A stretch of DNA of 64,000 bases, from NCBI GenBank assembly GCA_002269645.1, contig NIVC01002016.1:66729-130728 (forward strand). The letters run 5' to 3'. The notes beneath the pieces were generated by a model that saw nothing but the letters and a program-made list of their open reading frames with translations, searched no databases and had not been told where the DNA came from. This stretch comes from Macrostomum lignano (Eukaryota). This document shows positions 2,748-59,796 of this stretch, piece after piece. The position numbers and the translations under genes were made by a program. The stretch's first letter is position 1. Every line of letters starts with the position of its first letter.

Positions 2748-2852
2748 CGAGCTGTTCCGCCCCCCCCCGGGCTGGTCTTTAGGCTTCTGCAATGTCACCA
2801 AGTCAAATCCAATTTCCCTTTCAGGCGGCAGCAGTCCAATAAACCAGTCGCA

Positions 2853-4150
2853 ATGTTGGGCAGCTGCAACAACAGCGCCATCAGCGCAATCAGCGCCCAG
2901 TACGATCGAGTGAGCACGCCGCTGCTGAGCGGCATCTCAGCCCTGTCTCTGCTGCTCAACGCCTGCAACATCGCCATATTCAGCAAGCGCAAAATGGTCT
3001 CGCCAACCAACTCAATTCTGCTGGCCATTGCCGTCAGCGATATCTGCAAAGTGTCCATGTTCCTGCTCATCACGGCGGCCCCTCCGCCCGTGACATCCTA
3101 CGGCAGGCAGGTGATCTACCTGTTCTGCAACGTGGCCATGTTCCTCATGCACGCCTTCGCCCTGTGGTGCGGCGTCCTGCTGGCTCTGTTCCGCTTCTTC
3201 TACCTGCGCTACTACGCCTCGCCAGCACCAAGGTGTGGTTCAGCCTGGCCCGCGCCCGCCTGGCCGTCTGCCTGGCCTTCCTGGCCAACATCGGCGCCGT
3301 GGCGCCCTACGCCAGCGTCCTGCGCGTCATCGAGCGCCGGACAGCCGACGCACAATTTTTGGCGGCAGGTGGCAGCGGCAACGCCACGCAGCAGCAGCAG
3401 CCGGTAACGGCGGCGGAGGCGGCTGCTCCGATAGCGGCGGCAGTTCACTACGAACCGGCCATGCTGGATGAGTACGAGTTCAAGGTGCGAATGTTCAGCA
3501 GCATAGCACAGAAGCTGGTGCCTTGCCTCATCATGACGGCCTTCTGCCTGTGCATCATTCGCAGCCTGCGCCAGACGGAGAAACGACGCGAGTCCCTAGC
3601 GAATCCGAATCGAAACAGCGGCCAGAAATCGGCGAGCGGGAGCTGCGGCGGCGGCGGCGGCGGCGGCGGCGACAGCGGCAGTCGCAGGAAGGAGCGACGC
3701 TCGCGCGATCACCACCGAACAACCAGCTTCCTGTTGATCATCATGCTGCTGTACAGCCTCTACGAGATCCCCATGGGCCTGCTGCTGATCCTGTCTGACC
3801 CGGCTCTGGAGCTCAGCGCCGTGATCTGCTTCTACAAAGCCTTTCACGGCATCCTCAACACGCTTGGCCTGGTGAATAACACGGTCAACTTTGTCCTCTA
3901 CTGCTTCATGAGCAAGCAGTTCAGGGACACCTTCAAGGAGGTATTCGGCCTCGACAAGCTGGCTGAGAAAGTGAGACAGGCAACCACCCGACGGCCGGAT
4001 GCGGCTCTGGTGGCAACTGGAGAGGCAGCTCGAGGCGACGCGGCGCCGGCTGCGGCGGCTGTTGCAGAGACCCACGAAGCGATGAGTTTGTACAGCTGCG
4101 GAGATTGCGGTCACAACGACATCCATGACGAAATTGAAGATGACGCTTGA
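2853..4150 (+). CDS. Rhodopsin-class GPCR, Srw/FMRFamide-myosuppressin-receptor-like, single coding exon, 1-nt frameshift near 3216
   Basis: TM1-3 in ORF 2853 ([34 protein letters not shown]) continue in the 3164 frame ([52 protein letters not shown]). Acceptor-like TTCCCTTTCAG ends at 2824, upstream of the ATG. Confidence 0.85.
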
Positions 4151-14478: not shown

Positions 14479-15531
14479 AAAAGTCACATGGTGCCAGGTC
14501 TGGACTGTGAGCAGGGTGAGCCATCAGCTGGACCCCACAGTCAGCCAGAAACTTGAGAGTTTGAGCCGCCATGTGCACACTGGCGTTGTCGTGGTGCAGA
14601 AGCACCCTGCGCATTTCGCACCTTGGGCACCTCTGGCTCACAGCAGAAAAGACTTTGGGTAGGCAAACTGTTGTGTACCAGTCGGCGGTGACTGGCGATC
14701 TTCAAGTGAAACGGAAGCCACATGCCCAGTGCGCATGAAGAAACAGCCCACCATCTGCTTGCCGACACTTCGGCTGCGTTGAAACTTGGTGGGGCTGTCC
14801 TCGTCTCCAAAGGTCCACATGGCTGACTGGCGCTTGCTTTCGGGGTCGTATTGATAAATCCAGGTCTCATCGCCCGTGAGGATGTCCCAGATATGCTGGC
14901 TGGTCCCAGATTCGAATTTCTGCAGCATGAATCGGCACCAAGCCACCCTGGTGTCCTTCTGCATGTCAGACAGCTGATGGGGGATCCACCGGGAAGCCAG
15001 CTTCCGCACTCCAAGGTGTTCGTGCAGAATGGCGTGCACACTCTCCGATCCAATACCGATCTCCTGCTGGATCTGCTGGTAGGTTACTCGCCGGTCAGCG
15101 GCAATCATGCTGGACACAGCGCAGATATTTTCTGGAGTCACTGCGTCACAGGGTCTCCCGGATCGATGTTCATCTTCGAGGCTTTCTCAACCTCAGCGAA
15201 ACTCAGCAAACCAGTTTTTGAAGGTTGCGTATGAAGGACACAGATGGGTGAAACGTTCTGTAAAGTTTGATATGAATCGGCCGGCGACTTGCCTTGCTTG
15301 AAGTACAAGTACATCATTGCTCTGAAGTCGCGATTTTCCAGCTTCATTGTTGAATTGAAGAACTCAGGAAGTGAACTGACTTTAACTCGCTGCAGTGGAC
15401 TCAAAAGTGGCTGCTTCTGTTTGAAAATTTTGCTGCGATACTTTTAAAAACTAGTCTTTACCATAGACAAATTTCATGCTTCTACGTCTCGTGGATCCTA
15501 CTCAGGCTAAAGACTTTCTGAGTGACCCTCG
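14479..15531 (-). mobile_element. Mariner (Tc1/mariner) transposon, frameshifted and 3'-truncated
   Basis: HTH N-terminus (RAMMYLYFKQGKS), RWIPHQL, TGDETW, HHDNAS and HSPDLAPCDFF motifs over several frames; one TIR CGAGGGTCACTCAGAAAGTCTTT ending at 15531 with TA at 15532-15533; the other end is missing. Confidence 0.93.
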
Positions 15532-16057
15532 TACTGGCCCACACACATACATGCACTGCACGCAGTACACAGTCATCAACAAGAAAAGGAAAACTACATT
15601 ATTAAAGTTGCTCACAGCATATTTAAAGAACATATAAATATGAATTTCGTCTGTACACGCCCAAACTGACATGTTTATTGATTTAATCAATTAATAGAGC
15701 TAAGTATTATACGAAGAAACAAAGATTTAAACTCTGAATGAAAAATTATAATTACAAGAAATAATGGTTGCATCAACTTTTAACGACAAAACGCAAATAA
15801 GTATTCAAGCAAGTTAAAGCGACCACAAGCAACATAGCAATCATAACATGGGACTAATAATCTGTACAAAGTCAATACAAAAAACTGAAACAAAAAATTT
15901 GCTACTGTTACTGTACCTATTTATTATTGTGAAATTGATAATTAAAACTAAAATAGTTGAAAGACTTGGAGAGACAACAATTAACACCACACAAAATTGG
16001 TAATAATTTTAACTGGCATGGTAATGCATTATCTTGGACAAATAGCTGCTGAGTGAG

Positions 16058-16827
16058 TCACACTGGACACAAAGCTGTTTCCTACAAGTCACACTGGACA
16101 CAAAGGTGTCTCCTATAAGTCACCTCTCAGACACAAAGCTGTCTCCTACAAGTCACACTGGACACAAAGATGTCTCCTACAAGTCACCTCTCAGACACAA
16201 AACTGTCTCCTACAAGTCACACTGGACACAAAGCTGTCTCCTACAAGTCACAGTGGACACAAAGCTGTCTCCTGCAAGTCACACTGGACACAAAGCTGTC
16301 TCCTACAAGTCACCTCTCAGACACAAAGCTGTCTCCTACAAGTCACACTGGACACAAAGCTGTCTCCTACAAGTCACCTCTCAGACACAAAGCTGTCTCC
16401 TACAAGTCACACTGGACACAAAGCTGTCTCCTACAAGTCACAGTGGACACAAAGCTGTCTCCTACAAGTCACAGTGGACACAAAGCTGTCTCCTGCAAGT
16501 CACACTGGACACAAAGCTGTCTCCTACAAGTCACAGTGGACACAAAGCTGTCTCCTACAAGTCCCCTCTCAGACACAAAGCTGTCTCCTACAAGTCACAC
16601 TGGACACAAAGCTGTCTCCTACAAGTCACAGTGGACACAAAGCTGTCTCCTGCAAGTCACACTGGACACAAAGCTGTCTCCTACAAGTCACAGTGGACAC
16701 AAAGCTGTCTCCTACAAGTCCCCTCTCAGACACAAAGCTGTCTCCTACAAGTCACAGTGGACACAAAGCTGTCTCCTGCAAGTCACACTGGACACAAAGC
16801 TGTCTCCTACAAGTCACAGTGGACACA
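16058..16827. repeat. 31/33-bp minisatellite (GACACAAAGCTGTCTCCTACAAGTCACACTG)
   Basis: Direct; begins about 50 bp past the stop of the minus-strand ZF gene. Confidence 0.95.
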
Positions 16828-16876
16828 AAAAAAATGCATAGCCGGACACAACAGCTGCAGACAAAGCACAAACCAG

Positions 16877-17222
16877 TTAGCTAGAATGGCTAATCATGTG
16901 AAGGCTGAGGTCGTCAACATTATCATAAGCCATGGGGCAGATTGGACAGGGCAGCTTGTCGCCGGGGCCTCGAGCCCGTTTCAGCATCAAGTGAGTCCGA
17001 TAAGTGTGATTGTTCAACAGCAGCTGGCTGTCGAAATTCTTACAGCAGATTGGGCACCGAAGCTGCTTCGGGCGCTTGTCTACTACTGGCTGCTGCTGTT
17101 GCTGCACTGACTGCGGTTGGGCAGGCCCTTCTTGGCTGACCCCGGCATCGTCCGCGTGGGAGCTGCTGCCGCTGACGCTGCCGCGCAGCCACTACGGTCC
17201 ACTGGGCCTTTCTCTGCCACAC
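16877..17222 (-). CDS. C2H2 zinc-finger gene A, last exon (2 fingers); apparent 1-nt deletion near 17184
   Basis: CPICCKNFDSQLLLNNHTYRTH and CPICPMAYDNVDDLSLHMISH; acceptor CTGCAG at 17228-17223; exon is 1 nt short of keeping frame. Confidence 0.8.
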
Positions 17223-18347
17223 CTGCAGTTGTATGAGGATTTGGCATCGGGATAAATCAAATGCGATCCGGAGATGAGGATCGGGATCAATTCTGGGTAT
17301 AAAGATTAGGATTATAAAATCTGATCTTTAGATGAAGATTGGGATCATATTGTGGGATCTAGGGGGTGAGGATTGGGGTTATAATGTGAGATCTAGGGGA
17401 TGAGGATTGGGATCATATTGTGGGATCTAGGGGGTGAGGATTGGGATCATATTGTGGGATCTAGGGGGTGAGGATTGGGGTTATAATGTGAGATCTAGGG
17501 GTGATGATTGGGATCATATTGTGGGATATAGGGGGTGAGGATTGGGATCATATTGTGGGATCTAGGGGGTGAGGATTGGGGTTATAATGTGAGATCTAGG
17601 GGATGAGGATTGGGATCATATTGTGGGATCTAGGGGATGAGGATTGGGATCATATTGTGGGATCTAGGGGGTGAGGATTGGGATCATATTGTGGGATCTA
17701 GGGGATGAGGATTGGGGTTATAATGTGAGATCTAGGGGTGATGATTGGGATCATAAAGTGAGATCTAGGGGATGAGGGATTTGGACTAAAAAGTGGGATT
17801 TAGGGGATGAGGATTTGGATTTTAAAGTGGGATCTAGGGGATGAGGATTGGGATTAAAGTGGGATCTAGGGGGTGAGGATTGGGATCATATTGTGGGATC
17901 TAGGGGATGAGGATTGGGGTTATAATGTGAGATCTAGGGGTGATGATTGGGATCATAAAGTGAGATCTAGGGGATGAGGGATTTGGACTAAAAAGTGGGA
18001 TTTAGGGGATGAGGATTTGGATTTTAAAGTGGGATCTAGGGGATGAGGATTGGGATTAAAGTGGGATCTAGGGGATGAGGATTGGGATCATATTGTGGGA
18101 TCTAGGGATGAGGATTGGGGTTATAATGTGAGATCTAGGGGTGATGATTGGGATCATAAAGTGAGATCTAGGGGATGAGGATTGGGGTTATAATGTGAGA
18201 TCTAGGGGTGATGATTGGGATCATAAAGTGAGATCTAGGGGATGAGGATTGGGATTTTAAAGTGGGATCTAGGGGATGAGGATTGGGAGTATAAAGTGGG
18301 ATTTAGGAGATGACGATTAGGATTAAAAAGTGGGATCTAGGGGATGA

Positions 18348-18424
18348 GCTTGGCGATGGTTCCCAACCTCCACGATTGGTGCCAAGCGGGCAGACTGGCG
18401 TGCCAGTCTGGCAAATAAGGAACC
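18348..18424 (+). ncRNA. HDV-like self-cleaving ribozyme (candidate)
   Basis: P1 GCTTGGC/GCCAAGC (7 bp); P3 ACC/GGT; L3 TCCACGATT; P1.1 CC/GG; P4 CAGACTGGC-GT-GCCAGTCTG; J4/2 GCAAA with catalytic C equivalent at 18412; P2 GGTTCC/GGAACC. Folded by eye against the HDV genomic ribozyme. Confidence 0.8.
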
Positions 18425-18662
18425 GGGGGGCGGTGAGGCCCGCGGCCGTGATTTGAAAACCACGTCCCGCGGGCAAAACCGCACCCGGCAGAGTGACCAC
18501 GGCATAACGAACCGTGGGACCTCTTTAAACGAAACCATCGTGAATCACCGGAGAGAGCAGGCGAGAGAGACAAGATCGGCAATGCGAAGCGTAAGAGCTG
18601 GAGTAAGGGACTCCCGGTGAGCTATGCCGAAAGGCGACAAAAAGCGAGAAGAAGAAGAAGAA
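18348..18662 (+). mobile_element. Short non-autonomous non-LTR retroelement (SINE/SIDE-like, probably RTE-derived) with a 5' ribozyme and (GAA)n tail
   Basis: Unique 315-bp insert in the minisatellite, flanked by GATCTAGGGGATGA(G) on both sides (18334-18348 and 18663-18677), 3' tail GAAGAAGAAGAAGAA, 5' end at ribozyme G1. Confidence 0.75.
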
Positions 18663-18818
18663 GATCTAGGGGATGAGGATTGGGATTATAAAGTGAGATC
18701 TAGGGGATGAGGACTGGGATCATTAAGTGGGATTTAGGGGATGAGGATTGGGATCATAATATAGAATTTAAGGATGAGGATTGGGATTTCTCTATCGAGG
18801 ACTGAGGCTAACACTCGC

Positions 18819-19280
18819 CAGTAGCAAAGCAGCCCTCCCTCCGCCCACCATCGCTGCTGACTCCACTGTCTCCGCCGCTGTCCTGTTCCGTCGCATTTGT
18901 CAACCTCCGCTTCAACGGTGGTGCAGCAGAGGCGTTCGATATTTCAGCAGCCGCTGTCGCCGCCGCCGCCGCTTCGCTGTTGAAATCTTCGTCGGCAACG
19001 GCGTGTCGCTCGAGCAGATGTTGGTCAAGCTGATCGGCGCTAGTGAACCTGGTGTTGGCGCACAGGAAGCAGGAGTACTTTGCTATGCAGGAGACGGCTT
19101 CGACAATAATCACTTTGGATTGCTGCTTCCGGGTGCAGCTTAGCTCGTGCCGAGCCTCCTGATTGGCGCCAGTTTGAGCAGCCGCTGGAGTCAAACCGGA
19201 AGGAGGGTTGCCTGAACAGTCAGCTGGTTTGCAGCTTAGCTCGTGCCGAGCCTCCTGATTGGCGCCAGTTTGAGCAGCTG
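18819..19280 (-). CDS. C2H2 zinc-finger gene A, exon 3 (1 finger)
   Basis: YSCFLCANTRFTSADQLDQHLLERH; acceptor TTTGACTCCAG ends at 19281, phase matches the upstream exon; donor is either GC-type at 18818 or GTTAGC about 6 nt further, both phase 1. Confidence 0.75.
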
Positions 19281-19424
19281 CTGGAGTCAAACCGGAAGGA
19301 GGCATCAGTAAAAAAGGTCCAAAAATAAATAAAATACCAAAATAAAATGACCCTGGAGTCTACAGACTCAGTGTTAACAGATTACTCGCGTAGATTCTGA
19401 CTTGGTTATAAACCAAATGGAAAT

Positions 19425-19822
19425 CTAGGGAATTACAGACCGATGACCAGCCGAAAATATTGGGAATTAGGGGCCGATGACCAGCCGAAAATATGGGGAA
19501 TTAGGGGCCGATGACCAGCCGAAAATATGGGGAATTAGGGGCCGATGACCAGCCGAAAATATGGGGAATTAGGGGCTGATGACCAGCCGAAAATATGGGA
19601 AATTAGGGGCCGATGACCAGCCGTAAATATGGGGAATTAGGGGCCGATGACCAGCCGAAAATATGGGGAATTAGGGGCCGATGACCAGCCGTAAATATGG
19701 GGAATTAGGGGCCGATGACCAGCCGTAAATATGGGGAATTAGGGGCCGATGACCAAATGCAAATATAGGGAATTAGGGGCCGATGACCAGCCGTAAATAT
19801 AGGAATTAGGGGCCGATGACCA
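19425..19822. repeat. 34-bp intronic minisatellite (GCCGATGACCAGCCGAAAATATGGGGAATTAGGG)
   Basis: Direct, about 11 units. Confidence 0.93.
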
Positions 19823-19865
19823 ATGTAAATTCTGCAAACAGCAAACACCCTAAATCTGTACTAAC

Positions 19866-20256
19866 CAACTCTGCACTCCTGCCCGCTGTCCTCTTCTAGT
19901 TCGCTATCATTTCTGTTAGTTGAGGCGAACGATTCGGAGTTCGAACCCGCGTGCTGCCTCAACAGATGCCGGTCAAGACAATCGGCCGTAGGCAGCTCAC
20001 GATCGCATAGGAAGCACTTGTAGGGCTTGAGTTGATTAGGCTGAGGCGAATTACTTCCACTGCGATCAAACTGTTGCTGCTGCTGCTGCCGCTGTCGAAG
20101 TTCAGATTCGGCGATGTTGCGACGACGCATTTTGAGAAAATTTTTCAGCACATTTGTCACCTTTCGGTCTTTGCTAATTGGGGCACTGAGATTAGGAGGC
20201 CGTCGTTGAGACTGCGGAGATTCTGACTGATTTGAGCATTGCTGTGGCCTGGAAGA
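19866..20256 (-). CDS. C2H2 zinc-finger gene A, exon 2 (1 finger)
   Basis: KPYKCFLCDRELPTADCLDRHLLRQH; acceptor poly-C..CTATCCAG, donor GTTAGT; 391 nt gives phase 0 to 1. Confidence 0.8.
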
Positions 20257-20397
20257 CTGGATAGATAGGAGGGGGGGGGGGAAGGCGTTTTAGTAAAATG
20301 TGTTTTAGCTACTTGAAATAGAGCTGTACTGATATTTTAATTGCAGTTGATAAAATTATCAAGGCTTGGATGCAACATTCTTGAATAGCGGGGACTT

Positions 20398-21075
20398 AGA
20401 ATTCGAGGGATTTCAATTCCAGGAAATCGAAATTATGAAGATTTGAATTCCAGGAAATACCAAAACTCTGCGGATTTAAATTTCAAGAAACCGAGATTCT
20501 GAGGATTAGAATTCCAGGAAACCGAAATTCTGAGGATTTGAATTCCAGGAAACCGAAATTCTGAAGATTTGAATTCCAGGAAATCGAATATCTAAGGATT
20601 AGAATTACAGGAAACCGAAATTCTGAAGATTAGAATTCCAGGAAACCGAAATTCTGAAGATTAGAATTTCAAGAAACGAAAATTCTGAAGATTAGAATTC
20701 CAAGAAACCGAAATTCTGAGGATTAGAATTCCAGGAAACCGAAATTCTGAGGATTAGAATTCCAGGAAACCGAAATTCTGAGGATTTGAATTCCAGGAAA
20801 TCTAATATCTAAGGATTAGAATTCCAGGAAACCGAAATTCTGAAGATTAGAATTCCATGAAATCGAATATCTAAGGATTAGAATTCCAGGAAACCGAAAT
20901 TCTAAGGATTAGAATTCCAGGAAACCGAAATTCTGAAGATTAGAATTCCAGGAAACCGAAATTCTGAAGATTAGAATTCCAAGAAACGAAAATTCTGAAG
21001 ATTAGAATTCCAAGAAACGAAAATTCTGAAGATTAGAATTCCAGGAAATCGAATATCTAAGGATTTGAATTCCAA
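20398..21075. repeat. 31-bp intronic minisatellite (GAATTCCAGGAAACCGAAATTCTGAGGATTA)
   Basis: Direct. Confidence 0.93.
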
Positions 21076-21110
21076 GACACCTACAGAAAAGCAAATGCAG
21101 ATCGAACTAC

Positions 21111-21458
21111 CTGAACAGCGGCTCCACTTTCCAAACTAAACGAAAGATCCTCTCTGAGTTGTCCACGGGTAACATCTGGGCAATCTGAATGGCAGACAAC
21201 TAGATGCTCCATCAATTCCCAATCAGTTGGGCAAGTCTCACTACAAAGCTCGCATTGCCAATTTGCACTGGCAGAATTTGGCGTTGGCGGCACATGCAGC
21301 TGCAGTGACACAGCTGGGTTGGGCTGCATCAGCATTAGCTGACGGTGTTCAGCCAGATGACTGGCAAGCTCCTGCTGGCTGGACTGTGGCAGCCAGCATA
21401 GTGGACAGGCCAGTGTGGCCTGCAGCTGCCTGTTGCAATCTGGCTGGGCTTCTTGCAT
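21111..21458 (-). CDS. C2H2 zinc-finger gene A, first identifiable coding exon (2 fingers)
   Basis: CPLCWLPQSSQQELASHLAEH and CELCSETCPTDWELMEHLVVCH; donor CAG|GTAGTT at 21110; ATG at 21458 may or may not be the true start. Confidence 0.75.
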
Positions 21459-24400
21459 GCAAGGGAATGCGATTTAATATTTAACTTAACATTAAATACC
21501 AGTATAGCTATAGGATTAGGATTCTATAGCAACTATGATAAAATTGGTAGGCCTACCTATTACCTAATAGTAATTAGACCTAGCTATTTCCTTTTCTATA
21601 TAGCTACTACAAGTACTAAAGAAATATAATTGTTAGATGTTTTTTTATTTATATAGTGCTATGCCTTTTGTGACTTTTTTATCATTAGTAACTATAATAT
21701 AATAATATGAAACTAATCACTTAGTTGTACAAAGAAAGGCTACATCATATATACCAAGTGTACATTGTTTAATGTTGGCCATTAAGTTACACTCAGAGTC
21801 ATTGTTGATATCAGTTGACTTGCCAATAGCATAGTCAAGATCAGTATTGGTATAGAAGAATGTTATAATAGCCTGTGACAGCTTGGTTAGCAAGGGTAAG
21901 CTGTTTTACTAATAATGTCCTTTTGCACTATAGCTTATTATTGACTATTAGATATTCTAGATATTCTATTCTATCTAGCTAAAAGGACTTGGAGATATAG
22001 CTACTGTATTTCTTAGCAAAGATAGTCAAAAAGAATATCAAAAACAAACACAAAAAGTGGGCGATATAAGAAAATAAAAATACAAAATGCAATACAAAGA
22101 CCAACATAACTAAATTAAAAATGCAATTAGGTCTAGTGGTAGCATTGGTTTAGGCCTAGCCCAAACTAAAAATCATGCATAATGGGCCTATAGGGTATAC
22201 TAAACATTTTTATGCCTACTCCATAGTCTGGATCATGCTAGGTACATGCCTGAACAAAAATCAAATAATAACAAATACATGCTAAAAAATTAAGTTCACG
22301 TCCATTCTTAAAACTATGCAGGTATTACGACAATGAATGACCTTTTTATATTATGAAAATAAATGACCCTTTTTTAAATTGCACAATGGACCCTTTTTGG
22401 CAAATAATTTGGTTTTTGCTTTTTGGCAATATTATTTACTACTATTACTAAAAATTGATACATACATAGATTTGTTAAAATGATTTATTATGAGCTTAAA
22501 AACCTGAAAAGCTTAAAATTTAGACTTAAAATGAACTTTTTTATATTTTTTTCTATTGCACTGTAACTTTTCTTTGTGATTATATAAAGTGCATGCCAGG
22601 TGTTTTTTATTAGAGACAGGGGGGTTGTGTGTACCTTGGCACACTTTAAGTGACATAGGTACAAAACCAGCAAAAGGCATTACTGCCCATTCTGCCAACT
22701 CTCCTGAGTAGGCATACAAGCACGCGGATATGTATGTAGGCACACACTTACATAGGAGTGTACAGCAGCTCTAACTTTATTTATTGTTAAGCATATATAT
22801 ACTTCATTGCGCCTTAGGGGATGGGCTCTCAAGGCTGTTAATTGCATAAGCAGAGCCAAGCCAAGATTTTAATTCAGCCCCATATTAATGTGACTGCACT
22901 TGGAATCAAGCCTGGGTTGTTGGCACACCAGAGCCTGTGCTAGACTGCTGGGCTACGGCCTTCTGCATGCCAAGTGTGCATATAAAGGCCTATACTATTT
23001 TCTTAGAAGTGATGGATGCCAATTGTGCATGCCTGTTTTTGGCATGCAAGGCCAATGCATGCCTGAATTTTCTGGCATAGGCCTATACTATATGATCTGG
23101 AGTGTGGTGCATACTATAGCCTAAGCCTAGGCTATTAAATGCATTTGGTATGATATTATTATTGTTATATTTATGTAATATTTAAACATAATAAAATAGC
23201 TTCAATTTAACCCAATATAATTTGACATAATTTTATATAAAAGCACATTATTATTAGCATATTATTTTATAGGCCTATTTAGGAATATTAGGCCTGTCAT
23301 GCCTATGATCTTACTATAGATAGATAGATGAGCCTAAGGCGGCAAGGCCTAGGATATATCTATATCTTTGGCTTAAGGCTTAAAAACATTAAGAACTAAT
23401 TAATAAAGGCTTCATTGTAGGGCCTACCTATCTATTAAGCTAATAAACTTCAAAATATGCCTAGTAGGCCTACAGACTAGAGACCAATACAAGTCTGCCA
23501 TTTGTAGACTAGCTGGCTGCCTCATCCCATGGGCCATGGGATACCCCAGCTCGAGCTCTAAGGCCCATGAGAGTTAGCTGTAGCATGCTAGGCCTAGTGG
23601 CAAGACCAATATAATTTGGCAATTGGCATAATTAACTCACACAATTTTTTCTGCATTGAAGATTCAAGAATGAAGAAGACGAGACAAAGGCAAGATTATT
23701 TTCATAAAAATGTAGGCCTACCATACACCTAATAAAGCATTTCGATATGATAGACTATTGATATATGCCCTACCCATCTGACATCAATGTTAGACTGAAC
23801 CAAACCTTAGATTACCGATCATACCTAATGAACATTTCGCTTACATTGATTTCAATCGATTACACCATGCACGTACTTGTAATTAACCAGCAGTTTTGCG
23901 AGTTTAAACATTAAGAATATCTATTTCTCCGAAAATGCATGTTTAAGCAAACCTGACAAAAAATAATGTGCTCTATTCAGTGTAACACACACACACTAAT
24001 AAATGTAGAATTCGGTTTTTCAAATAAAAATAATTTTCTGTAAAAAACGGAAATTGTTTAAGATCTCGGTTAAATTCAGAACTGATTTTCCGATATTATC
24101 GAGAATTCTAGAGTCCACTATACTCTACAGTACACGTCCCAATCCCAAAGCTTAATTAATCATTCGTATAACTAGCTATACTTATCTTGCGTTAGTTCGG
24201 TAGCATCAAGGAATACTGAAATTATATGTATACTAACTAAGGTCTATACTAGTTTACGGATTACTCAAGAATAAAAGCTAGCCATGCCATCACATCTACT
24301 ACAAGTGGTCCTTGAGTAATCCGTGCATGCGTGCAGTGCATGGCTTGTAAGGGCCGTTGTTGTCCTTTGGGGTAGCATCAGCAGCAAGCTAAATGTAGAG

Positions 24401-27400: not shown

Positions 27401-29388
27401 ACACAAATTCTAGGCGCCTAGGCCTAGGCCCAAAGAAGAGTTTGAGCTCTCACTATTGCCACACGATCGCCTATACTATTTTTGAATCTCTATCTCCCTA
27501 GTTGATTACGCTCGTACATCTTTTTCACGCCCCGCGCCGCGATCAGATAGTGAGGTTGAAGACTTGAGACCAAATACGAGTATGTGGAACAGCTGAGACG
27601 ACTAGAGGAAGCGTCCAATTTTGCCGAGATCGAAAATGCAAATGACCCGACATCCCGTGTTCCAGACCGCGGCTTTCATTGATAAAGTTTTCAGCTGACT
27701 AAAGCTTAGGTCACAGCGCGGCAAACACAGCTGTCTAGTTATTGTATTACTTGAAGTAGTTAGAACTATACGATTATAGGCACTCGCAAATAACTTGATA
27801 CCGCCTAGAGTAAATACATAATGTAGTAAAGCAAAAAGTCTGCTGCATTGGTGCTCCTGCACTATCGGCCTAATTATCTGCCAACTGGATCTCTCCGGTC
27901 TAAGCAGCCGATCTGTCAGCCAAATCTCCAGCTATCGATTCTGTAACTGCCTCTGCGCCAGGAGGTAATCCGCAGAGGACAAACAGTCTTGAGCTCATGC
28001 GCAGATAGAAGGCTCAAACCCTTGTCAGACTGTATGCCAACCGGACTAGCTAATCCAATAGAAGCCACCAATTAGCACCCCGTCTGGGCCACTGCGTCGA
28101 TTTTTTATAAAATCAAAGCAGACAAAATCAACTACTGTACGAGTAGAAGGCAGTTTGTCACGTCGATTCTGAAGTCGATGGAATAAATCAATTCAGAAAT
28201 TTGCTTTTCCTTCATCATTTTTATCTGTAAAAAACAACTTTCTTTTTACAATAGAAACTTTCTTCCGCAGCATCAGTAGTTGGTCAATCTCGTCGGCCTT
28301 ATCGGCGCCACGCCGACTGTTAAAACGGCAACAGGCGAGCCATCAAAGCGGCACTGCATCGCCGCGCCAGCCTGACCCGTCCAAGCGACGTGTCGCGCCG
28401 ACGGAGACTCCAGTTGGCAGGCTACATCATCCACACCGAGTCGTACTGCCTACAGACAGTGCAGTATTTCGTCGATTGACGGCCAACGACAAGACTCCGA
28501 GGCGCGCCCGGCCTGTAGCGCTATTGTTCTGAATGCCCTATAATGTTTCGACAACATAACATAAAGATTTTGTACAAAATCCCGGTGTATTGGATATATA
28601 TTATATTGGATTAGCAAGATGAGATTAAGGACAAAATCCTGTCTTCTTCGCAAAGAAATTTACTTCAACAAATTTTCACTTAATTGTCTTCAATTTCAAA
28701 TACGGCACAAAGCCGACAGCAGTTAAGACGGTCACGATTTTCCACGATTCTCACGGAAGCATGCCTTCGTCAGGTCAGCTCACCGAAGATTCTTAATAAA
28801 ATATTTCGTGAATATAGACGCCGCGGTGAATACTAGTTGCAGACTCTCTTGTTAATTCGTTTCACCTGCCTTCTGCACCAATTGACCCATGCTCACATAA
28901 TCATAGGCATCTGCCGGCGTCTGTATAGAATTCCGAGCACGAGAAATTTGAGTAGCTGCCTTAGTCCCCAGGGCGCAGTCTCGTGTCTCGGCCTACCCTG
29001 CAAGCTTTCCAGGCCAGCCCGCTAATAAGCGAATACGTGACGAGCCGCTTCAACTGCCGTGCACCTTTCGACACGTCTTGCGTGCATCTTCTGAGCAAAG
29101 TCGTTATCCCTTTGTCGTCATCCCTCTAGGAGCAGCCGGCTGACACGTTCGCCCTTCGGGGTTACTACAGTAGTTGACCAATAGCATGCCATCTAAGGCT
29201 CCATTCGCTCTCCATTTTATCCCACGGCCTCTCCAATCCGATTCCTAGGCATGCTTTGCCCTATTCTCTCCAGTGCCTACTGATAAAAACTGGGCCCAGT
29301 AAATCAGAAAGATCGCCATCTCTAACTGCCTAACAACTTCTGGTTGAATTCCTACCTTCTCTCTACTCGCAATTCCCGCCACGCTGCT

Positions 29389-30624
29389 ATGCTGGAGTCC
29401 CAGGCCGACCACGAGAACCACATCAACAATCGGACGAGCGCGGTGGATGAACCGCCTGAGCGGGTGCTGGCCTTCATCTCCGGGATTGCCATCCTGCTCT
29501 GCCTGGTGCTGGGCGCCCTCGGTAACCTATGGATTATGATTGTGGTGCTGGTCCGCCGCGAGATGCGGAGCAACCTAATTAACCTGTTCATTGCCAGTCT
29601 ATGCCTGAACGACTTGTTGAACTTGCTGCTAAACCAGAGCATGGTGGCGGTTTCCTATTTAGCCGGAAGCTGGAAGCTGGGTCCTCTGCTCTGCGAGCTC
29701 ATGCCAGAGCTCAACATGTTGCTGGTGTGCGTCTCCCTCTGGCACCACGCCTTAATTAGCCTGCACCGCTACATTGTGGTGGTGCACAACAGCACCTACG
29801 TACAGCTGCACAAGGGTCTGTACGCTGGCATCATCCTGGCCGGTACTCGAGTGTTTGGCGCCCTGCTCAGCCTCTCCTTGCCGCTCTTCAACTCGGGCAG
29901 TTGGCGCGGCAGCACTGTCTATCAGGCCAAGATGCTGCGCTGCATCTACGAGAGAACCCAGCGGTTCCGCATACTGGGGGTCGTGATCATCTCCCAGCTG
30001 ATTCCTTGCGCGATCGTCATCGTCTGCTTCGCCCTGATCTTCGTGTTTGTCCGCCGGGCCAACACCGGCTCTCTGGTCAGCGATCAGCTGCTGATGCGAC
30101 GCGAGCTGCGCATCACTAAGATGTTCGGCGTCGTGTTTCTCATGTTCCTGGTGGGGTTCCTGCCCTACGGCTGTCTGAGAATGATAGACTCTGGCAACAC
30201 ACTCGGGCCGCAGGCGTACGTGCTCGTCACGCTGCTATACGCTGCTGCGTCCAGCGTCAACCCGCTGATCTTCGGCGCCATGAACAGAGAAATCCGGCTG
30301 GCCTGCCTGCGGCTGATCTCGCGGAGGAGCTCCCGGGCTTCCGCCGCCGCTGCCGCTGGCGCCTCCACAGCCGCCCGCACTGCCTCTGCAACCGCAGCCA
30401 CCGGGAATAAGGTCCAACAGAAGCGACAAAAAAAGAAGCCAGTCGCCGCCGCCGCCTCGGTGGTTGAGGTCGGCGCCAGCAAGAATCGCTGCCGGCCGTC
30501 TACGGAGCTTTCGTCTTCGCTGGGCAGCGGCGCCACTGCCGGGCCGGAGAGCCGCCAGCTGCTGTCCGTCAGCGACCCGGACCAGAGCTGCCAGCAGGAG
30601 AGCGACACCACACTGATGGATTGA
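29389..30624 (+). CDS. Rhodopsin-class GPCR, Tre1/Moody/GPR84/melatonin-receptor-like, single coding exon, 411 aa
   Basis: GN in TM1, NLFIASLCLND in TM2, WKLGPLLC, ISLHRYIVVVH, RRELRITKMF, FLPY, NPLIFGAMNREIR; N-terminal NRT glycosylation site. Confidence 0.92.
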   Translation: MLESQADHENHINNRTSAVDEPPERVLAFISGIAILLCLVLGALGNLWIMIVVLVRREMRSNLINLFIASLCLNDLLNLLLNQSMVAVSYLAGSWKLGPLLCELMPELNMLLVCVSLWHHALISLHRYIVVVHNSTYVQLHKGLYAGIILAGTRVFGALLSLSLPLFNSGSWRGSTVYQAKMLRCIYERTQRFRILGVVIISQLIPCAIVIVCFALIFVFVRRANTGSLVSDQLLMRRELRITKMFGVVFLMFLVGFLPYGCLRMIDSGNTLGPQAYVLVTLLYAAASSVNPLIFGAMNREIRLACLRLISRRSSRASAAAAAGASTAARTASATAATGNKVQQKRQKKKPVAAAASVVEVGASKNRCRPSTELSSSLGSGATAGPESRQLLSVSDPDQSCQQESDTTLMD

Positions 30625-35182: not shown

Positions 35183-38100
35183 CCTGTCACAGACCCTAAA
35201 GCACCTACCTGTCACAGACCCTGAAACTCTATCACAGACCCTAGAGCATCTATCACAGACTGAAGTGATTAAAGAACCCTGTCACAGACACTAAAACTTT
35301 GTCACAAACCCAAGAGCACCTGTCAAAAGCCATAGAACCCGGCCCCTGTCACAGACCCTAGAGTACCTGTCACAGACCCTAGAGTACCTGTCACAGACCC
35401 TAGAGTACCTGTCACAGACCCTAGAGTACCTGTCACAGACCCTAGAGTACCTGTCACAGACCCTAGAGTACCTGTCACAGACCCTAGAGTACCTGTCACA
35501 AACCCTGGAGTACCTGTCACAGACCCTAGAGTACCTGTCACAGACCCTAGAGTACCTGTCACAGACCCTAGAGTACCTGTCACAGACCCTAGAGTACCTG
35601 TCACAGACCCTAGAGTACCTGTCACAGACCCTAGAGTACCTGTCACAGACCCTAGAGTACCTGTCACAGATCCTAGAGTACCTGTCACAGACCCTAGAGT
35701 ACCTGTCACAGACCCTAGAGTACTTGTCACAGACCCTAGAGTACCTGTCACAGACCTTAGAGTACCTGTCACAGACCCTAGAGTACCTGTCACAGACCCT
35801 AGAGTACCTGTCACAGATCCTAGAGCACCTGTCACAGACCCTAGAGTACCTGTCACAGACCCTAGAGTACCTGTCACAGACCCTAGAGTACCTGTCACAG
35901 ACCCTAGAGTACCTGTCACAGACCCTAGAGTACCTGTCACAGACCCTAGAGTACCTGTCACAGACCCTAGAGTACCTGTCACAGACCCTAGAGTACCTGT
36001 CACAGACCCTAGAGTACCTGTACAGACCCTAGAGTACCTATACAGACCCTAGAGTACCTGTCACAGACCCTAGAGTACCTGTACAGACCCTAGAGTACCT
36101 GTCACAGACCCTAGAGTACCTGTCACAGACCCTAGAGTACCTGTCACAGACCCTAGAGTACCTGTCACAGACCCTAGAGTACCTGTCACAGACCTTAGAG
36201 TACCTGTCACAGACCCTAGAGTACCTGTCACAGACCCTAGAGTACTTGTCACAGACCCTAGAGTACCTGTCACAGACCTTAGAGTACCTGTCACAGACCC
36301 TAGAGTACCTGTCACAGACCCTAGAGTACCTGTCACAGACCCTAGAGTACCTGTCACAGACCCTAGAGTACCTGTACAGACCCTAGAGTACCTATACAGA
36401 CCCTAGAGTACCTGTCACAGACCCTAGAGTACCTGTCACAGACCCTAGAGTACCTGTCACAGACCCTAGAGTACCTGTCACAGACCCTAGAGTACCTGTA
36501 CAGACCCTAGAGTACCTATACAGACCCTAGAGTACCTGTCACAGACCCTAGAGTACCTGTCACAGACCCTAGAGTACCTGTCACAGACCCTAGAGTACCT
36601 GTACAGACCCTAGAGTACCTATACAGACCCTAGAGTACCTGTCACAGACCCTAGAGTACCTGTCACAGACCCTAGAGTACCTGTCACAGACCCTAGAGTA
36701 CCTGTCACAAACCCTGGAGTACCTGTCACAGACCCTAGAGTACCTGTCACAGACCCTAGAGTACCTGTCACAGACCCTAGAGTACCTGTCACAGACCCTA
36801 GAGTACCTGTCACAGACCCTAGAGTACCTGTCACAGACCCTAGAGTACCTGTCACAGACCCTAGAGTACCTGTCACAGACCCTAGAGTACCTGTCACAGA
36901 CCTTAGAGTACCTGTCACAGACCCTAGAGTACCTGTCACAGACCCTAGAGTACTTGTCACAGACCCTAGAGTACCTGTCACAGACCTTAGAGTACCTGTC
37001 ACAGACCCTAGAGTACCTGTCACAGACCCTAGAGTACCTGTCACAGACCCTAGAGTACCTGTCACAGACCCTAGAGTACCTGTCACAGACCCTAGAGTAC
37101 CTGTCACAGACCCTAGAGTACCTGTCACAGACCCTAGAGTACCTGTCACAAACCCTGGAGTACCTGTCACAGACCCTAGAGTACCTGTCACAGACCCTAG
37201 AGTACCTGTCACAGACCCTAGAGTACCTGTCACAGACCCTAGAGTACCTGTCACAGACCCTAGAGTACCTGTCACAGACCCTAGAGTACCTGTCACAGAC
37301 CCTAGAGTACCTGTCACAGATCCTAGAGTACCTGTCACAGACCCTAGAGTACCTGTCACAGACCCTAGAGTACCTGTCACAGACCCTAGAGTACCTGTCA
37401 CAGACCTTAGAGTACCTGTCACAGACCCTAGAGTACCTGTCACAGACCCTAGAGTACCTGTCACAGATCCTAGAGCACCTGTCACAGACCCTAGAGTACC
37501 TGTCACAGACCCTAGAGTACCTGTCACAGACCCTAGAGTACCTGTCACAGACCCTAGAGTACCTGTCACAGACCCTAGAGTACCTGTCACAGACCCTAGA
37601 GTACCTGTCACAGACCCTAGAGTACCTGTCACAGACCCTAGAGTACCTGTCACAGACCCTAGAGTACCTGTCACAGACCCTAGAGTACCTGTCACAGACC
37701 CTAGAGTACCTGTCACAGACCCTAGAGTACCTGTCACAGACCCTAGAGTACCTGTCACAAACCCTGGAGTACCTGTCACAGACCCTAGAGTACCTGTCAC
37801 AGACCCTAGAGTACCTGTCACAGACCCTAGAGTACCTGTCACAGACCCTAGAGTACCTGTCACAGACCCTAGAGTACCTGTCACAGACCCTAGAGTACCT
37901 GTCACAGACCCTAGAGTACCTGTCACAGATCCTAGAGTACCTGTCACAGACCCTAGAGTACCTGTCACAGACCCTAGAGTACTTGTCACAGACCCTAGAG
38001 TACCTGTCACAGACCTTAGAGTACCTGTCACAGACCCTAGAGTACCTGTCACAGACCCTAGAGTACCTGTCACAGATCCTAGAGCACCTGTCACAGACCC

Positions 38101-38421
38101 TAGAGTACCTGTCACAGACCCTAGAGTACCTGTCACAGACCCTAGAGTACCTGTCACAGACCCTAGAGTACCTGTCACAGACCCTAGAGTACCTGTCACA
38201 GACCCTAGAGTACCTGTCACAGACCCTAGAGTACCTGTCACAGACCCTAGAGTACCTGTCACAGACCCTAGAGTACCTGTACAGACCCTAGAGTACCTAT
38301 ACAGACCCTAGAGTACCTGTCACAGACCCTAGAGTACCTGTACAGACCCTAGAGTACCTGTCACAGACCCTAGAGTACCTGTCACAGACCCTAGAGTACC
38401 TGTACTCTCGTACAGACCCTA
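35183..38421. repeat. 21-bp minisatellite (GTCACAGACCCTAGAGTACCT), about 3.2 kb
   Basis: Direct; degenerate left edge, homogeneous core; source of the VTGTLGS/SQTLEYL ORFs. Confidence 0.98.
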
Positions 38422-55589: not shown

Positions 55590-55871
55590 TTACTGATCTG
55601 GCACCAAATCAAACCGATCAATAGTGCCAATAACAAGAGTGGCAAAGTCAAAAAATGAATTGATGGCCACTCGTAATTTTCTCACTTGCCCCGAGGTGAA
55701 AGTCACAACAACCAACGAGCCATCTGCTCTAATAGTCTTAGTAACGAAGCTTCTTGGAGGCTCAGGGTCAACAGATAGGCTGGTGCAAGCAATCTCGGCA
55801 TGTCTGGTATCCTTGAACGGGATTCGCAGAACAGCCTGATGTACTTGGTCTGAGTCTCCAGTTGAATTCAT
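55590..55871 (-). CDS. LAGE3: KEOPS/EKC complex subunit Pcc1/LAGE3 homolog, 93 aa
   Basis: LRIPF..RHAEIACTSLSVDPEP...VTKTIRADGSLVVVTFTSGQVRKLRVAINSFFDFATLVIGTIDRF matches the CTAG/Pcc1 family signature. Confidence 0.93.
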   Translation of the reverse strand: MNSTGDSDQVHQAVLRIPFKDTRHAEIACTSLSVDPEPPRSFVTKTIRADGSLVVVTFTSGQVRKLRVAINSFFDFATLVIGTIDRFDLVPDQ

Positions 55872-57979
55872 GATTGACACATGAAATTGTATAGTTATGT
55901 ATGTATTTTATATCATGCCATGTTGCTACTGCCTAAGCAAAATTATAAACATAATGGCTTTTCACTTTCAATGTGAGGGGAGCTCTTAAGTCCCTAGAAA
56001 TTGGGGACTCAAGCAACAAGACAAATTACTGATGTAAATTGGGGTTGGAATAGGAATAGGGGAGGGCTAAAGTTAAGATAAATGTTTTCACTTTCAATAC
56101 AAGCGAAGCTCTTAAGTCCCTAGGCTCAGGGACTCAAACAACATTTTTGCACCACATGCATGTTTTGGTTGGAATGGTGGGGGCTTAAGTTAAGATGGTG
56201 AATGAAGGAGAGATATGTGAGGAGGAGGCAGAAAGGGGAAAGAAGAGCAGGAAGAGGGGAGAGAGAAGGGAAAAGAGAGAAAGGGGGCAGAGAAGAGATA
56301 GAAAGAAAGAGGGAAGAGGAGAAGAGAGGAGAGGAGAGAACAGTCATAAAGACAAGTTGAGTTGATATGCATTGAGTGCCACAGATATATTCTGTCTGCA
56401 GAACACTTATTCATGGCTACATTCCTGCAGCTATAACAGCTAATAGTGAGGTCCCAATGCCTGATGCTAATCATACATGCGCAACAGTCGGCCGAGTCGG
56501 CCGATCCGGCCGACCGATTTGGCGGCCAATCAAGGAAGTCGCAAAAATGCCCACCCAAAAAATAACCTGAAGAGTAGTACTAAGTAGCTGACGAGGCATT
56601 TTAGCTTAATAAAACAGTCATAGTTACTCCTGCCGTTTACCCAAAGTTGCGTTAATTTTGCTTTCGGTTTTTTTTATATGTAAGTCGCATTTTTGGCCAA
56701 AAACTACGTCGCATTTTTGTTAAAACTAAGTCGCACGGCTGACCGAATTTTGGAGGTTGCACATGTATGATGCTAATGGCACACTGCAACCACAGCAAGA
56801 AAGTTACAGAAAGTTTATTAGCTAAAGATATGGATATAGATACATATAGGCTATTATAAAATTTTGGTTATGGTAGAACTATTTTCAACTATATTTAATA
56901 CTAAGAGGATATTTTAAATAATGCATGTGGGAAAAGCCTGTGGAAATTGGCTAGAATTGTGAGTCTAGGATTGGTGTACTACCTGACAATGTGAAAATTT
57001 TGACAAGGTTGCATAAAGGGACAAACTTATTATATAGTTTAACAATGACAATAAAAGGGTTAAACAATGATAGTAAGTGTTAAAAAATAACAGGCATCTT
57101 AATAAAAATATTATGACAATGCACTTGAGTAGTATTATGTTGCATTGTTAAAAATGGCCATAAGACACTCATGCACTATACTAATATACTAGACAATCTA
57201 CCATTGTTATAAACTCACTTTGATGCCTTATCACTTTGATAAGTGTTTAACACTTTTGCCATTGCCATAGACAACAAATTGACATCGGCAAATTAGAACA
57301 AATGCACTTATATAAAAATTAATAACATTGAGGAAATAATCTTTTTTGGTTAATAATAGTAGCATTACTATGATGAGTAATCATAGGAAAATACAATAAA
57401 TTTGCCCTTAGTCAGTTACTAATAAAATCAGTTACTAATGCCAATAGATCCAAATTGCTACTTGTTGAAAGTAAACATGCTGTATGCTATGGATAAGTAA
57501 GCAATTCTAATTAACATGTCTGAAGTAGTAAAGACATAGACATAACACCATGTCTATAATGTTGGAGCTTATAGGTATATCTACCATGTCTATAATGTTA
57601 AGCTTAGTACATATTGCTTTAAGTTTAAATTTTGGCTAAAAGGGACTACCAAAGTTTTTGCATTATACTCATACATAGATATATTACAATTGCCATGTCT
57701 CTATTTTGTGGTGTTGGCCTATGAACAAATATAAATCTAACAAATTATGAACTTGCAATTCCAACACATGTATTGACTATTGCCTTGGCCCATTTTGACT
57801 GTCACCTTTGCCTTTTTATTTGTTGCCCTTTTAATCTAGGCTGTAGCCAGCAATGATTGCCCATTCTGCAATTAGGCTTAGGTGATAAAGCCTACTTAGA
57901 TTCACAAAGTAAAAATTCATAAATGAGAAATAACATTTTAAACTATTGTATATTAAGTGATAATATGGGCCTGCCTGGC

Positions 57980-59748: not shown

Positions 59749-59796
<48 letters not shown>

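What the first reader, a model, noticed from the sequence alone, without database searches (positions are those of the whole stretch)
18334..18677. Candidate ribozyme-headed short retroelement family (RTE-derived, SINE/SIDE-like)
Seen: a 315-bp insert starting at ribozyme G1, with further hairpins (CCCGCGG..CCGCGGG, GCC-GAAA-GGC), a (GAA)5 tail and a 14-15 bp flanking duplication; no pol III A/B boxes are evident. Established: HDV-like ribozymes define the 5' ends of R2 and some RTE-clade retrotransposons, RTE tails are often short repeats such as GAA, and R2 produces short internally deleted ribozyme-bearing derivatives. Inference: a non-autonomous element that is released from host read-through transcripts by self-cleavage and mobilised by an RTE partner. 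The 3' part (QDRQ-RSVRAGVRDSR*) weakly resembles an RTE ORF end. I know of no description for this lineage. The TSD is confounded by the repetitive target.
Basis: partly seen in the sequence, partly recalled or inferred. Interest (0 to 1): 0.8.

Follow-up and report, generated by a model that had tools for sequence, protein, structure and literature searches.

The report
Ribozyme-headed short retroelement in a minisatellite
A 315-base non-coding insert in a flatworm-like genome starts exactly at the predicted cut site of an HDV-like self-cleaving RNA and ends in a (GAA)5 tail, which fits a known kind of parasitic short retroelement, but only this one copy could be examined.

Summary
Window 18348-18662 (315 nt, 58% GC) interrupts a 34-bp minisatellite (45% GC). 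It is flanked by the same 15-mer, GATCTAGGGGATGAG, at 18334-18348 and 18663-18677, and it ends in (GAA)5.

Its first 77 nt form a complete HDV-like double pseudoknot with 26 Watson-Crick pairs, an L3 of UCCACG, and a C in J4/2. It is the best Rfam match in the window: RF00094, 34.4 bits, below the gathering score of 50. It is also the only hit to my own descriptor. That descriptor hit shuffled sequence about once per 10^8 positions, yet here G1 falls exactly on the insertion junction.

The most likely reading is a copy made by target-primed reverse transcription from an RNA whose 5' end was set by self-cleavage. This resembles NARTc of Trypanosoma cruzi and the R2 SIDEs of Drosophila.

Three claims are not supported:
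- RTE ancestry. The (GAA)n tail fits RTE but is not specific to it. The open frame is not significant (p about 0.04-0.11) and has no homologue among 1.84 billion representative proteins.
- A multi-copy family. There is one copy in the window and none in any collection I could reach.
- The target-site duplication as independent evidence. It cannot be told from a 19-nt deletion in a 34-bp repeat.

Verdict: a new member of a known kind, of moderate interest.

The parts
17331..18787 (.). Host 34-bp minisatellite array (unit about GATGAGGATTGGGATCATAATGTGGGATCTAGGG) that the element interrupts
   Evidence: TRF (17331-18348, 30 copies; 18662-18787, 3.7 copies). The 15-mer recurs at 34-bp spacing.
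18334..18348 (.). 5' copy of the flanking 15-mer GATCTAGGGGATGAG, the candidate target-site duplication. Its last G is also ribozyme G1, so the duplication is 12-15 nt depending on how the junction overlaps are assigned.
18348..18424 (+). HDV-like self-cleaving ribozyme candidate, with predicted cleavage 5' of G18348. P1 is 18348-18354 with 18381-18387. P2 is 18358-18363 with 18419-18424. P3 is 18366-18368 with 18378-18380. L3 is UCCACGAUU at 18369-18377. P1.1 is C18370-C18371 with G18388-G18389. P4 is 18391-18398 with 18403-18410. J4/2 is 18411-18418.
   Evidence: Rfam RF00094 full-length alignment at 34.4 bits. Pair list is all Watson-Crick. It is the only descriptor hit in the window, with 6 hits in 587 Mb of shuffles.
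18412..18412 (+). Candidate catalytic cytosine in J4/2, equivalent to C75 of the viral ribozyme
   Evidence: It aligns to the GGC of the RF00094 consensus. The role of this C is described in PMC13635239. Activity was not tested.
18425..18647 (+). Structured non-coding body and 3' region. It holds hairpins 18438-18445/18467-18474 and 18497-18502/18512-18517, a long imperfect hairpin closed by 18545-18551/18614-18620, and a GNRA hairpin GCCGAAAGGC at 18626-18635, followed by the A-rich linker GACAAAAAGCGA.
   Evidence: strand folding: MFE -84.8 kcal/mol, z = -3.97, and 0 of 200 shuffles fold as well. Coordinates checked.
18648..18662 (+). (GAA)5 simple-repeat 3' tail. The next two bases, GA, are shared with the flanking repeat.
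18663..18677 (.). 3' copy of the flanking 15-mer GATCTAGGGGATGAG

Best explanation
Window 18348-18662 is one integrated copy of a short (315 nt), non-coding non-LTR retroelement RNA.

**Proposed mechanism**
1. A source copy is transcribed as part of a longer transcript.
2. The HDV-like ribozyme in the first 77 nt cleaves just 5' of G1. It needs no upstream sequence, so the RNA begins exactly at G1.
3. The structured 3' region and (GAA)n tail are used by a LINE reverse transcriptase and endonuclease supplied in trans.
4. Target-primed reverse transcription starts at a nick in the 34-bp minisatellite. The GA shared by tail and target suggests microhomology priming.
5. cDNA synthesis runs to the ribozyme-defined 5' end, probably leaving a 12-15 nt target-site duplication.

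**Shown:** the anatomy, the ribozyme fold in silico, and the coincidence of G1 with the insertion junction.

**Inferred:** self-cleavage activity, co-transcription, mobilisation in trans, and the existence of further copies. The clade of the partner is unknown. RTE is possible but not demonstrated.
For: - The insert breaks a regular 34-bp array and differs from it in composition: 58% against 45% GC.
- All five helices of the double pseudoknot are present, with 26 Watson-Crick pairs. L3 is UCCACG, P1.1 has two C-G pairs, and a C sits at the C75-equivalent position (feature definitions in PMC13635239).
- It is the best Rfam hit in the window and the only hit to a generic descriptor on either strand.
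- The descriptor's chance rate is about 1e-8 per position (6 hits in 587 Mb of shuffles), yet G1 lies on the junction base itself.
- An independent prokaryote- or phage-like contig (L003) carries the same 22-nt core with different, fully compensated P1, P2 and P4. It scores similarly on RF00094, at 29.2 bits. Sub-threshold scores are therefore consistent with a complete non-viral HDV-like fold.
- The body folds far better than shuffles, z = -3.97. A 3' hairpin followed by a simple-repeat tail is the usual recognition module of stringent LINEs (my own knowledge).
- The tail and TSD have an RTE parallel: a lepidopteran RTE with a (GAA)2GA tail, a 14-nt 3' UTR and a 20-bp TSD (PMC2887409).
- Precedents for the mechanism: L1Tc/NARTc (PMC3185411), R2 and R2/R1 SIDEs (PMC3414825), RTE and baggins ribozymes (PMC6765202), and the twister variant at the 5' end of flatworm Perere-3 with TSDs abutting the cleavage site (PMC8501958).
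- The perfect tail, identical flanks and unbroken helices suggest a recent insertion (inference).
Against: - The Rfam score of 34.4 bits is below the gathering score of 50, and the window-wide E-value is only 0.33. Extrapolated to a Gb-sized genome, about one chance hit to the covariance model and some tens to my minimal descriptor would be expected. The case therefore rests on the junction coincidence.
- The cleavage-site pair is G1-C, not the G-U wobble of the viral ribozyme.
- There is only one copy in 64 kb.
- No relative was found in any searchable collection. The host genome itself appears to be absent from those collections.
- No reverse transcriptase or endonuclease remnant lies nearby.
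- The TSD is equally well read as a 19-nt target deletion, because 15 + 19 = 34, the repeat period.
- This copy is antisense to the neighbouring minus-strand zinc-finger ORFs, so it would not be expressed by read-through from them.
Confidence: 0.7

Rival explanations
1. It is a one-off, internally deleted and dead-on-arrival copy of an autonomous ribozyme-headed LINE, not a member of a propagating SINE- or SIDE-like family. The ribozyme and the mechanism are the same, but no non-autonomous lineage exists.
For: There is a single copy in the window and no relatives in any collection. A frame is open from G1 to a stop 27 nt before the tail, as an in-frame internal deletion of an ORF-bearing element would leave.
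Against: The open frame is not significant, at 4-11% of shuffles, and has no homologue. The body is strongly structured, which fits a selected non-coding RNA better than a random leftover of coding sequence. The absence of copies in 64 kb says little about a whole genome.
Confidence: 0.2
2. The HDV-like fold is a chance or decayed motif. The insert is some other retroposed or filler sequence, and its 5' end was not set by self-cleavage.
For: The Rfam score is below the gathering score, with E = 0.33 window-wide. Minimal-descriptor hits do occur in shuffles (6 in 587 Mb). The G1-C pair replaces the viral G-U wobble. No activity data exist.
Against: The motif starts on the very base where the satellite is interrupted, with about 1e-8 chance per position. 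The helices far exceed the descriptor minimum: P4 has 8 bp, P2 has 6 bp, and P1 is all Watson-Crick. The L3 and J4/2 residues match the family consensus.
Confidence: 0.07
3. It is not a mobile element. It is a unique spacer between two blocks of the minisatellite, or DNA captured during repair or unequal exchange, with a coincidental GAA microsatellite.
For: The flanking 'duplication' is what any interruption of a 34-bp repeat can produce. Phase differences within a typical TSD range, taken as 8-20 nt, make up about 13/34 of all phases (arithmetic).
Against: This does not explain a complete ribozyme fold starting at the left junction together with a simple-repeat tail ending at the right junction. 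Both are hallmarks of retroposition by target-primed reverse transcription.
Confidence: 0.03
4. It is a retrocopy of a small ribozyme-bearing replicating or circular RNA (retrozyme-like or delta-like agent) that a LINE enzyme captured once.
For: A linear monomer of such an RNA would also begin at G1. Small ribozyme-bearing circular RNAs are known in metazoans (PMC7761336 and PMC7936874, listed).
Against: No ribozyme of any Rfam class lies on the opposite strand or at the 3' end. There are no tandem copies, so nothing would define a monomer's 3' end. The (GAA)5 tail sits inside the duplication, as in a LINE-type 3' end.
Confidence: 0.02

Closest known systems
NARTc, the non-autonomous partner of L1Tc in Trypanosoma cruzi (PMC3185411, PMC3383444)
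   Same: A short (about 0.26 kb), non-coding non-LTR element whose first ~77 nt are an HDV-like ribozyme cleaving at +1. It inserts without strict site specificity, carries TSDs, and is mobilised in trans.
   Different: NARTc has a poly(A) tail, and its ribozyme sequence doubles as an internal promoter (Pr77). Its host is a trypanosomatid with polycistronic transcription, and its autonomous partner is known. Here the tail is (GAA)n, no promoter is evident, the host is a metazoan and no partner is known.
R2 SIDEs and R2/R1 hybrid SIDEs of Drosophila (PMC3414825)
   Same: A 5' HDV-like ribozyme is joined directly to a LINE 3' end and no ORF remains. The hybrid SIDEs use another LINE's 3' end and give 14-bp TSDs.
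   Different: SIDEs sit at the R2 or R1 sites of 28S rDNA and depend on rRNA co-transcription. This element lies in a 34-bp minisatellite, and homology of its 3' end to any LINE is unproven.
HDV-like ribozymes at the 5' ends of RTE, baggins, R4 and Dong elements (Ruminski et al. 2011, as summarised in PMC6765202 and PMC3774820)
   Same: The ribozyme lies at the exact 5' junction of a promoter-less non-LTR element. RTEs carry short 3' UTRs with simple-repeat tails, including GAA (PMC2887409).
   Different: Those are autonomous, multi-kb elements with endonuclease and reverse-transcriptase ORFs. No sequence link between this insert and an RTE could be shown.
Flatworm ribozyme-bearing retroelements: the twister variant on Perere-3 (RTE clade) and the hammerhead in Schistosoma SINE-like repeats (PMC8501958, PMC6765202)
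   Same: The host phylum is probably the same. The logic is also the same: a self-cleaving RNA sits at the element's 5' end and the TSD abuts the cleavage site.
   Different: The ribozyme class differs (HDV-like). In the twister case the TSD supplies part of P1, whereas the HDV fold needs nothing upstream.

Membership tests
HDV-like self-cleaving ribozyme | Nested double pseudoknot with P1, P1.1, P2, P3 and P4 in the canonical order | tested here: met
   P1 7 bp, P2 6 bp, P3 3 bp, P1.1 2 bp and P4 8 bp, all Watson-Crick. It is the only descriptor hit in the window.
HDV-like self-cleaving ribozyme | Core residues: L3 of UCCNCG (the U and G of the reverse wobble, the CC of P1.1) and a cytosine in J4/2 (C75 equivalent) | tested here: met
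   L3 is UCCACGAUU at 18369-18377 and C18412 aligns to the consensus GGC. Roles are described in PMC13635239.
HDV-like self-cleaving ribozyme | Score at or above the Rfam gathering threshold of an HDV-type family | tested here: not met
   RF00094 gives 34.4 bits against 50, and drz-agam-1 gives 14.8 against 37. The prokaryote- or phage-like HDV fold in L003 also scores only 29.2 bits.
HDV-like self-cleaving ribozyme | G-U wobble at the cleavage-site pair, as in the viral ribozyme | tested here: not met
   The pair is G1-C40. L003 also has G-C. From my own knowledge this feature is not universal among HDV-like ribozymes.
HDV-like self-cleaving ribozyme | Site-specific self-cleavage giving a 5'-OH at G1 | not testable with these tools
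   Needs an in vitro transcription and cleavage assay or 5'-OH RNA mapping.
Non-autonomous non-LTR retroelement (SINE, SIDE or NARTc type) | No reverse transcriptase or endonuclease coding capacity | tested here: met
   The element is 315 nt. Its only long frame has no homologue.
Non-autonomous non-LTR retroelement (SINE, SIDE or NARTc type) | A 3' poly(A) or simple-repeat tail inside the flanking duplication | tested here: met
   (GAA)5 at 18648-18662 lies directly before the 3' 15-mer.
Non-autonomous non-LTR retroelement (SINE, SIDE or NARTc type) | Target-site duplication | tested here: inconclusive
   The 15-mer is identical on both sides, but the target repeats every 34 bp. A 15-nt duplication and a 19-nt deletion give the same sequence.
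Non-autonomous non-LTR retroelement (SINE, SIDE or NARTc type) | Multiple dispersed copies with a common 5' end and different flanks | tested here: inconclusive
   There is one copy in the window and none in the protein, viral or metagenome collections. The source genome could not be searched.
Non-autonomous non-LTR retroelement (SINE, SIDE or NARTc type) | 3' end shared with an autonomous LINE of the same genome | not testable with these tools
   No RT or EN remnant lies in the window, and the genome is not available.
RTE-clade derivative | Sequence homology of the 3' part to an RTE ORF end or 3' UTR | tested here: not met
   No hit was found for the frame ending RSVRAGVRDSR* in 5.8 billion indexed proteins or 1.84 billion exhaustively searched ones. 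The open frame arises in 4-11% of shuffles. The short 3' UTR and GAA tail are compatible with RTE (PMC2887409) but not specific to it.
R2 SIDE | Insertion at the R2 (or R1) site of 28S rDNA | tested here: not met
   The target is a 34-bp minisatellite. No rRNA match occurs in the window.
Classical pol III SINE | A tRNA-, 7SL- or 5S-derived head with internal A and B boxes | tested here: not met
   There is no tRNA and no small-RNA family match. The best box matches have 2 mismatches and lie inside ribozyme helices.

The most novel reading that the evidence does not exclude
The insert is one member of an active, multi-copy, promoter-less SINE-like family in a platyhelminth whose 'head' is an HDV-like ribozyme. 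That would add a third ribozyme class, after hammerhead and twister variants, recruited by flatworm retroelements. The family might also prefer this minisatellite as a target.
Probability: 0.35. Interest if true: 0.5.

Novelty: new member of a known kind. Interest (0 to 1): 0.4.

Why it matters
If the family is real, flatworm retroelements would have recruited three unrelated self-cleaving RNA classes for one job: defining the 5' end of a promoter-less transcript. That would make the phylum a useful comparative system for how ribozymes and LINE machinery are matched.

It would also supply a compact, apparently intact HDV-like ribozyme with a G-C cleavage-site pair for biochemical study.

It would not change the general picture. 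Ribozyme-headed autonomous and non-autonomous non-LTR elements are already established in insects, trypanosomes and other animals.

Tried and rejected
- **Rfam at gathering thresholds on the whole window:** no hit.
- **Looking for further copies.** blastn with word size 7 of the insert against the window found only low-complexity matches. Frame +0 (90 aa) and the minus-strand 94-aa frame found nothing in the 5.8-billion-protein index. Frame +0 also found nothing by exhaustive phmmer on 1.84 billion representatives, in IMG/VR or in JGI metagenomes.
- **Core DNA pattern scans.** The metagenome scan gave four loci. Three are chance matches in a bacterial gene. One, L003, is a genuine but unrelated prokaryote- or phage-like HDV fold. 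The same pattern found nothing in viral contigs.
- **Finding the host genome.** An exact look-up of the GPCR product failed. The best homologues are only 42% identical flatworm proteins, so the source genome is not in the collections.
- **Searching for a partner LINE in the window.** tblastn with a flatworm reverse transcriptase from L001 and Pfam scans of the complex ORF segments found no RT or EN. L001 itself is AT-rich with a poly(A)-tailed element and has no HDV-like motif.
- **MAFFT alignment of the two ribozymes.** It was not structure-aware and was not used. Pairs were listed by hand instead.
- **Rejected readings:** a tRNA-derived SINE, an R2 SIDE (wrong target), and a coding remnant.
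- **Ruminski et al. 2011:** the paper could not be read, as it is not held. Its content is cited only through reviews.

Full report
**1. What is in the sequence**

Reading 17900-19100 shows a 34-bp minisatellite. TRF places it at 17331-18348 (30 copies) and 18662-18787 (3.7 copies). An unrelated block that is richer in G+C interrupts it: 58% against 45% GC.

The 15-mer GATCTAGGGGATGAG lies at 18334-18348 and again at 18663-18677. Between the two copies are 314-315 nt that end in (GAA)5 at 18648-18662, the only such run in the window.

Both junctions are slightly ambiguous. G18348 can be read as the last base of the satellite's GATGAG or as the first base of the insert. The GA at 18663-18664 can be read as tail or as flank. 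The duplication is therefore 12-15 nt.

**2. Is the duplication meaningful?**

Not on its own. The 15-mer recurs every 34 bp across the array. Because 15 + 19 = 34, a 15-nt duplication and a 19-nt target deletion give the same sequence. About 13 of the 34 possible phase offsets would look like a TSD in a typical range, taken as 8-20 nt.

**3. The ribozyme**

A local Rfam search aligns the whole RF00094 (HDV ribozyme) model to 18346-18424 at 34.4 bits, E = 0.0031 for 601 nt. Across the whole window it is the best hit of all 4227 families, but E is only 0.33 and the score is below the gathering score of 50.

The fold is complete:
- P1: GCUUGGC / GCCAAGC
- P2: GGUUCC / GGAACC
- P3: ACC / GGU
- L3: UCCACGAUU
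- P1.1: CC / GG
- P4: CAGACUGG / CCAGUCUG
- J4/2: GCAAAUAA, whose C (18412) aligns with the catalytic C of the model

That gives 26 Watson-Crick pairs. The roles of P1.1, the L3 U and G, and the J4/2 cytosine are those described for viral and cellular HDV ribozymes (PMC13635239). One departure is the cleavage-site pair, which is G-C rather than G-U.

I wrote a generic descriptor that was not tuned to this sequence's helices. It requires G1, a 7-bp P1, a 3-bp P3, L3 of UCCNCG, GG for P1.1, P4 of at least 4 bp, a C in J4/2 and P2 of at least 5 bp. It hits only position 18348 on either strand of the window. In 4584 dinucleotide-preserving shuffles (about 587 Mb scanned) it hit 6 times, roughly 1e-8 per position.

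A Gb-sized genome would therefore contain some chance hits. A hit that starts on the very base where an independently defined insertion begins is not plausibly chance.

A metagenome scan for the 19 specified bases of the core returned one real HDV-like fold, L003. It lies in a prokaryote- or phage-like contig, between a terminator-like hairpin and an AGGAGG-GTG gene start. It shares the 22-nt core but has different, fully compensated helices:
- P1: GGUCUGC / GCGGACC
- P2: CCCC / GGGG
- P4: CGAAGAC / GUCUUCG

The three chance matches from the same scan fail the descriptor. L003 scores 29.2 bits on RF00094. Scores in the low 30s are thus consistent with a complete non-viral HDV-like fold.

**4. 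The rest of the element**

The 238 nt downstream of the ribozyme fold much better than shuffles: -84.8 kcal/mol, z = -3.97, 0 of 200 shuffles as good.

There is no tRNA, no small-RNA family match and no convincing A or B box.

The frame starting at G1 is open for 90 codons and stops 27 nt before the tail. This happens in 4% of shuffles for that frame and 11% for any frame. The peptide has no homologue in any protein search. I therefore treat the element as non-coding. The suggested resemblance to an RTE ORF end is unsupported.

**5. Context**

- The window is metazoan and probably platyhelminth. An intronless rhodopsin-type GPCR (29344-30624) has its best matches, at only 36-44% identity, in monogenean and cestode proteins.
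- The host genome itself is not in the searchable collections.
- The element lies on the + strand between minus-strand C2H2 zinc-finger ORF segments at 16880-17191 and 18811-19359. This copy is antisense to its neighbours.
- No reverse transcriptase or endonuclease remnant was found in the window. There is no second copy of the element.

**6. Mechanism**

The anatomy is that of a retroposed RNA. Its 5' end was created by ribozyme self-cleavage, and its 3' structured region plus simple-repeat tail was used for target-primed reverse transcription by a LINE enzyme acting in trans. The steps that are shown and those that are inferred are listed in the Best explanation section. The intact helices, perfect tail and identical flanks suggest a recent event (inference).

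**7. Comparison with what is known**

HDV-like ribozymes mark the exact 5' ends of R2, R4/Dong, L1Tc, baggins and RTE elements (PMC3774820; PMC6765202).

Short ORF-less derivatives that keep the ribozyme are known:
- NARTc in T. cruzi cleaves at +1 in vitro (PMC3185411).
- R2 SIDEs and R2/R1 hybrid SIDEs occur in Drosophila. The hybrids take the 3' end of another LINE and show 14-bp TSDs (PMC3414825).

RTEs do have short 3' UTRs with simple repeats, including (GAA)n, and long TSDs (PMC2887409).

In flatworms the described cases use other ribozyme classes. Perere-3 carries a twister variant with TSDs abutting the cleavage site (PMC8501958), and Schistosoma SINE-like repeats carry a hammerhead (PMC6765202). 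My literature searches found no HDV-like example in flatworms.

The element therefore works like NARTc or a SIDE. Membership of the RTE lineage failed the only test available, and family status could not be tested.

**8. Verdict**

- The ribozyme-headed retroelement reading is well supported at this one locus (about 0.7).
- RTE ancestry and family status are open.
- It is a new member of a known kind, of moderate interest (0.4).

Noticed in passing
L003 (JACCDP010192235.1), minus strand 1877-1805: A complete HDV-like ribozyme sits in a prokaryote- or phage-like contig, between a terminator-like hairpin and an AGGAGG-GTG gene start. It shares a 22-nt core with the window's ribozyme but has different, compensated helices. 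It scores 29.2 bits on RF00094 and 19.1 bits on RF02682.
   Followed up: partly
window 16880-17191, 18811-19359, 19864-20289, 21084-21473 (all minus strand): ORF segments with C2H2 zinc-finger motifs are separated by minisatellite arrays (34-bp at 17331-18787 and 19421-19822, 31-bp at 20400-20998). This looks like one multi-exon gene or a gene cluster with repeat-filled introns or spacers. The ribozyme element is antisense to it. Splice sites were not resolved.
   Followed up: partly
window 2843-4147 (+) and 29344-30624 (+): Two apparently intronless rhodopsin-family GPCR ORFs. The second is 36-44% identical to monogenean and cestode receptors, which is the basis for calling the host a probable platyhelminth.
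   Followed up: partly
window 35294-38308: Large tandem arrays are open in four reading frames for up to 565 codons and give spurious coiled-coil Pfam hits. Weak MIR1883-like Rfam hits are mostly spaced at 126 nt or multiples of it, probably reflecting a hairpin-forming repeat unit.
   Followed up: no
window 59200-64000: Long repeat arrays with extreme strand asymmetry (GC skew down to -0.68, AT skew down to -0.57) and low-complexity ORFs.
   Followed up: no
window 58006-58341 (+) and 14641-15186 (-): Degenerate DNA-transposon remnants: an ISXO2-like DDE transposase fragment (E 1.7e-5, just below the Pfam cut-off) and a weak Tc1/mariner-type HTH match.
   Followed up: no
window 55593-55907 (-): A single ORF segment with a clear Pcc1 domain (E 5.8e-22), from the KEOPS/EKC complex subunit family.
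   Followed up: no
window 16056-16829: A 31-bp minisatellite (24.6 copies) lies just upstream of the zinc-finger exon. Together with the other arrays, this makes the 15-21 kb region mostly tandem repeats.
   Followed up: no
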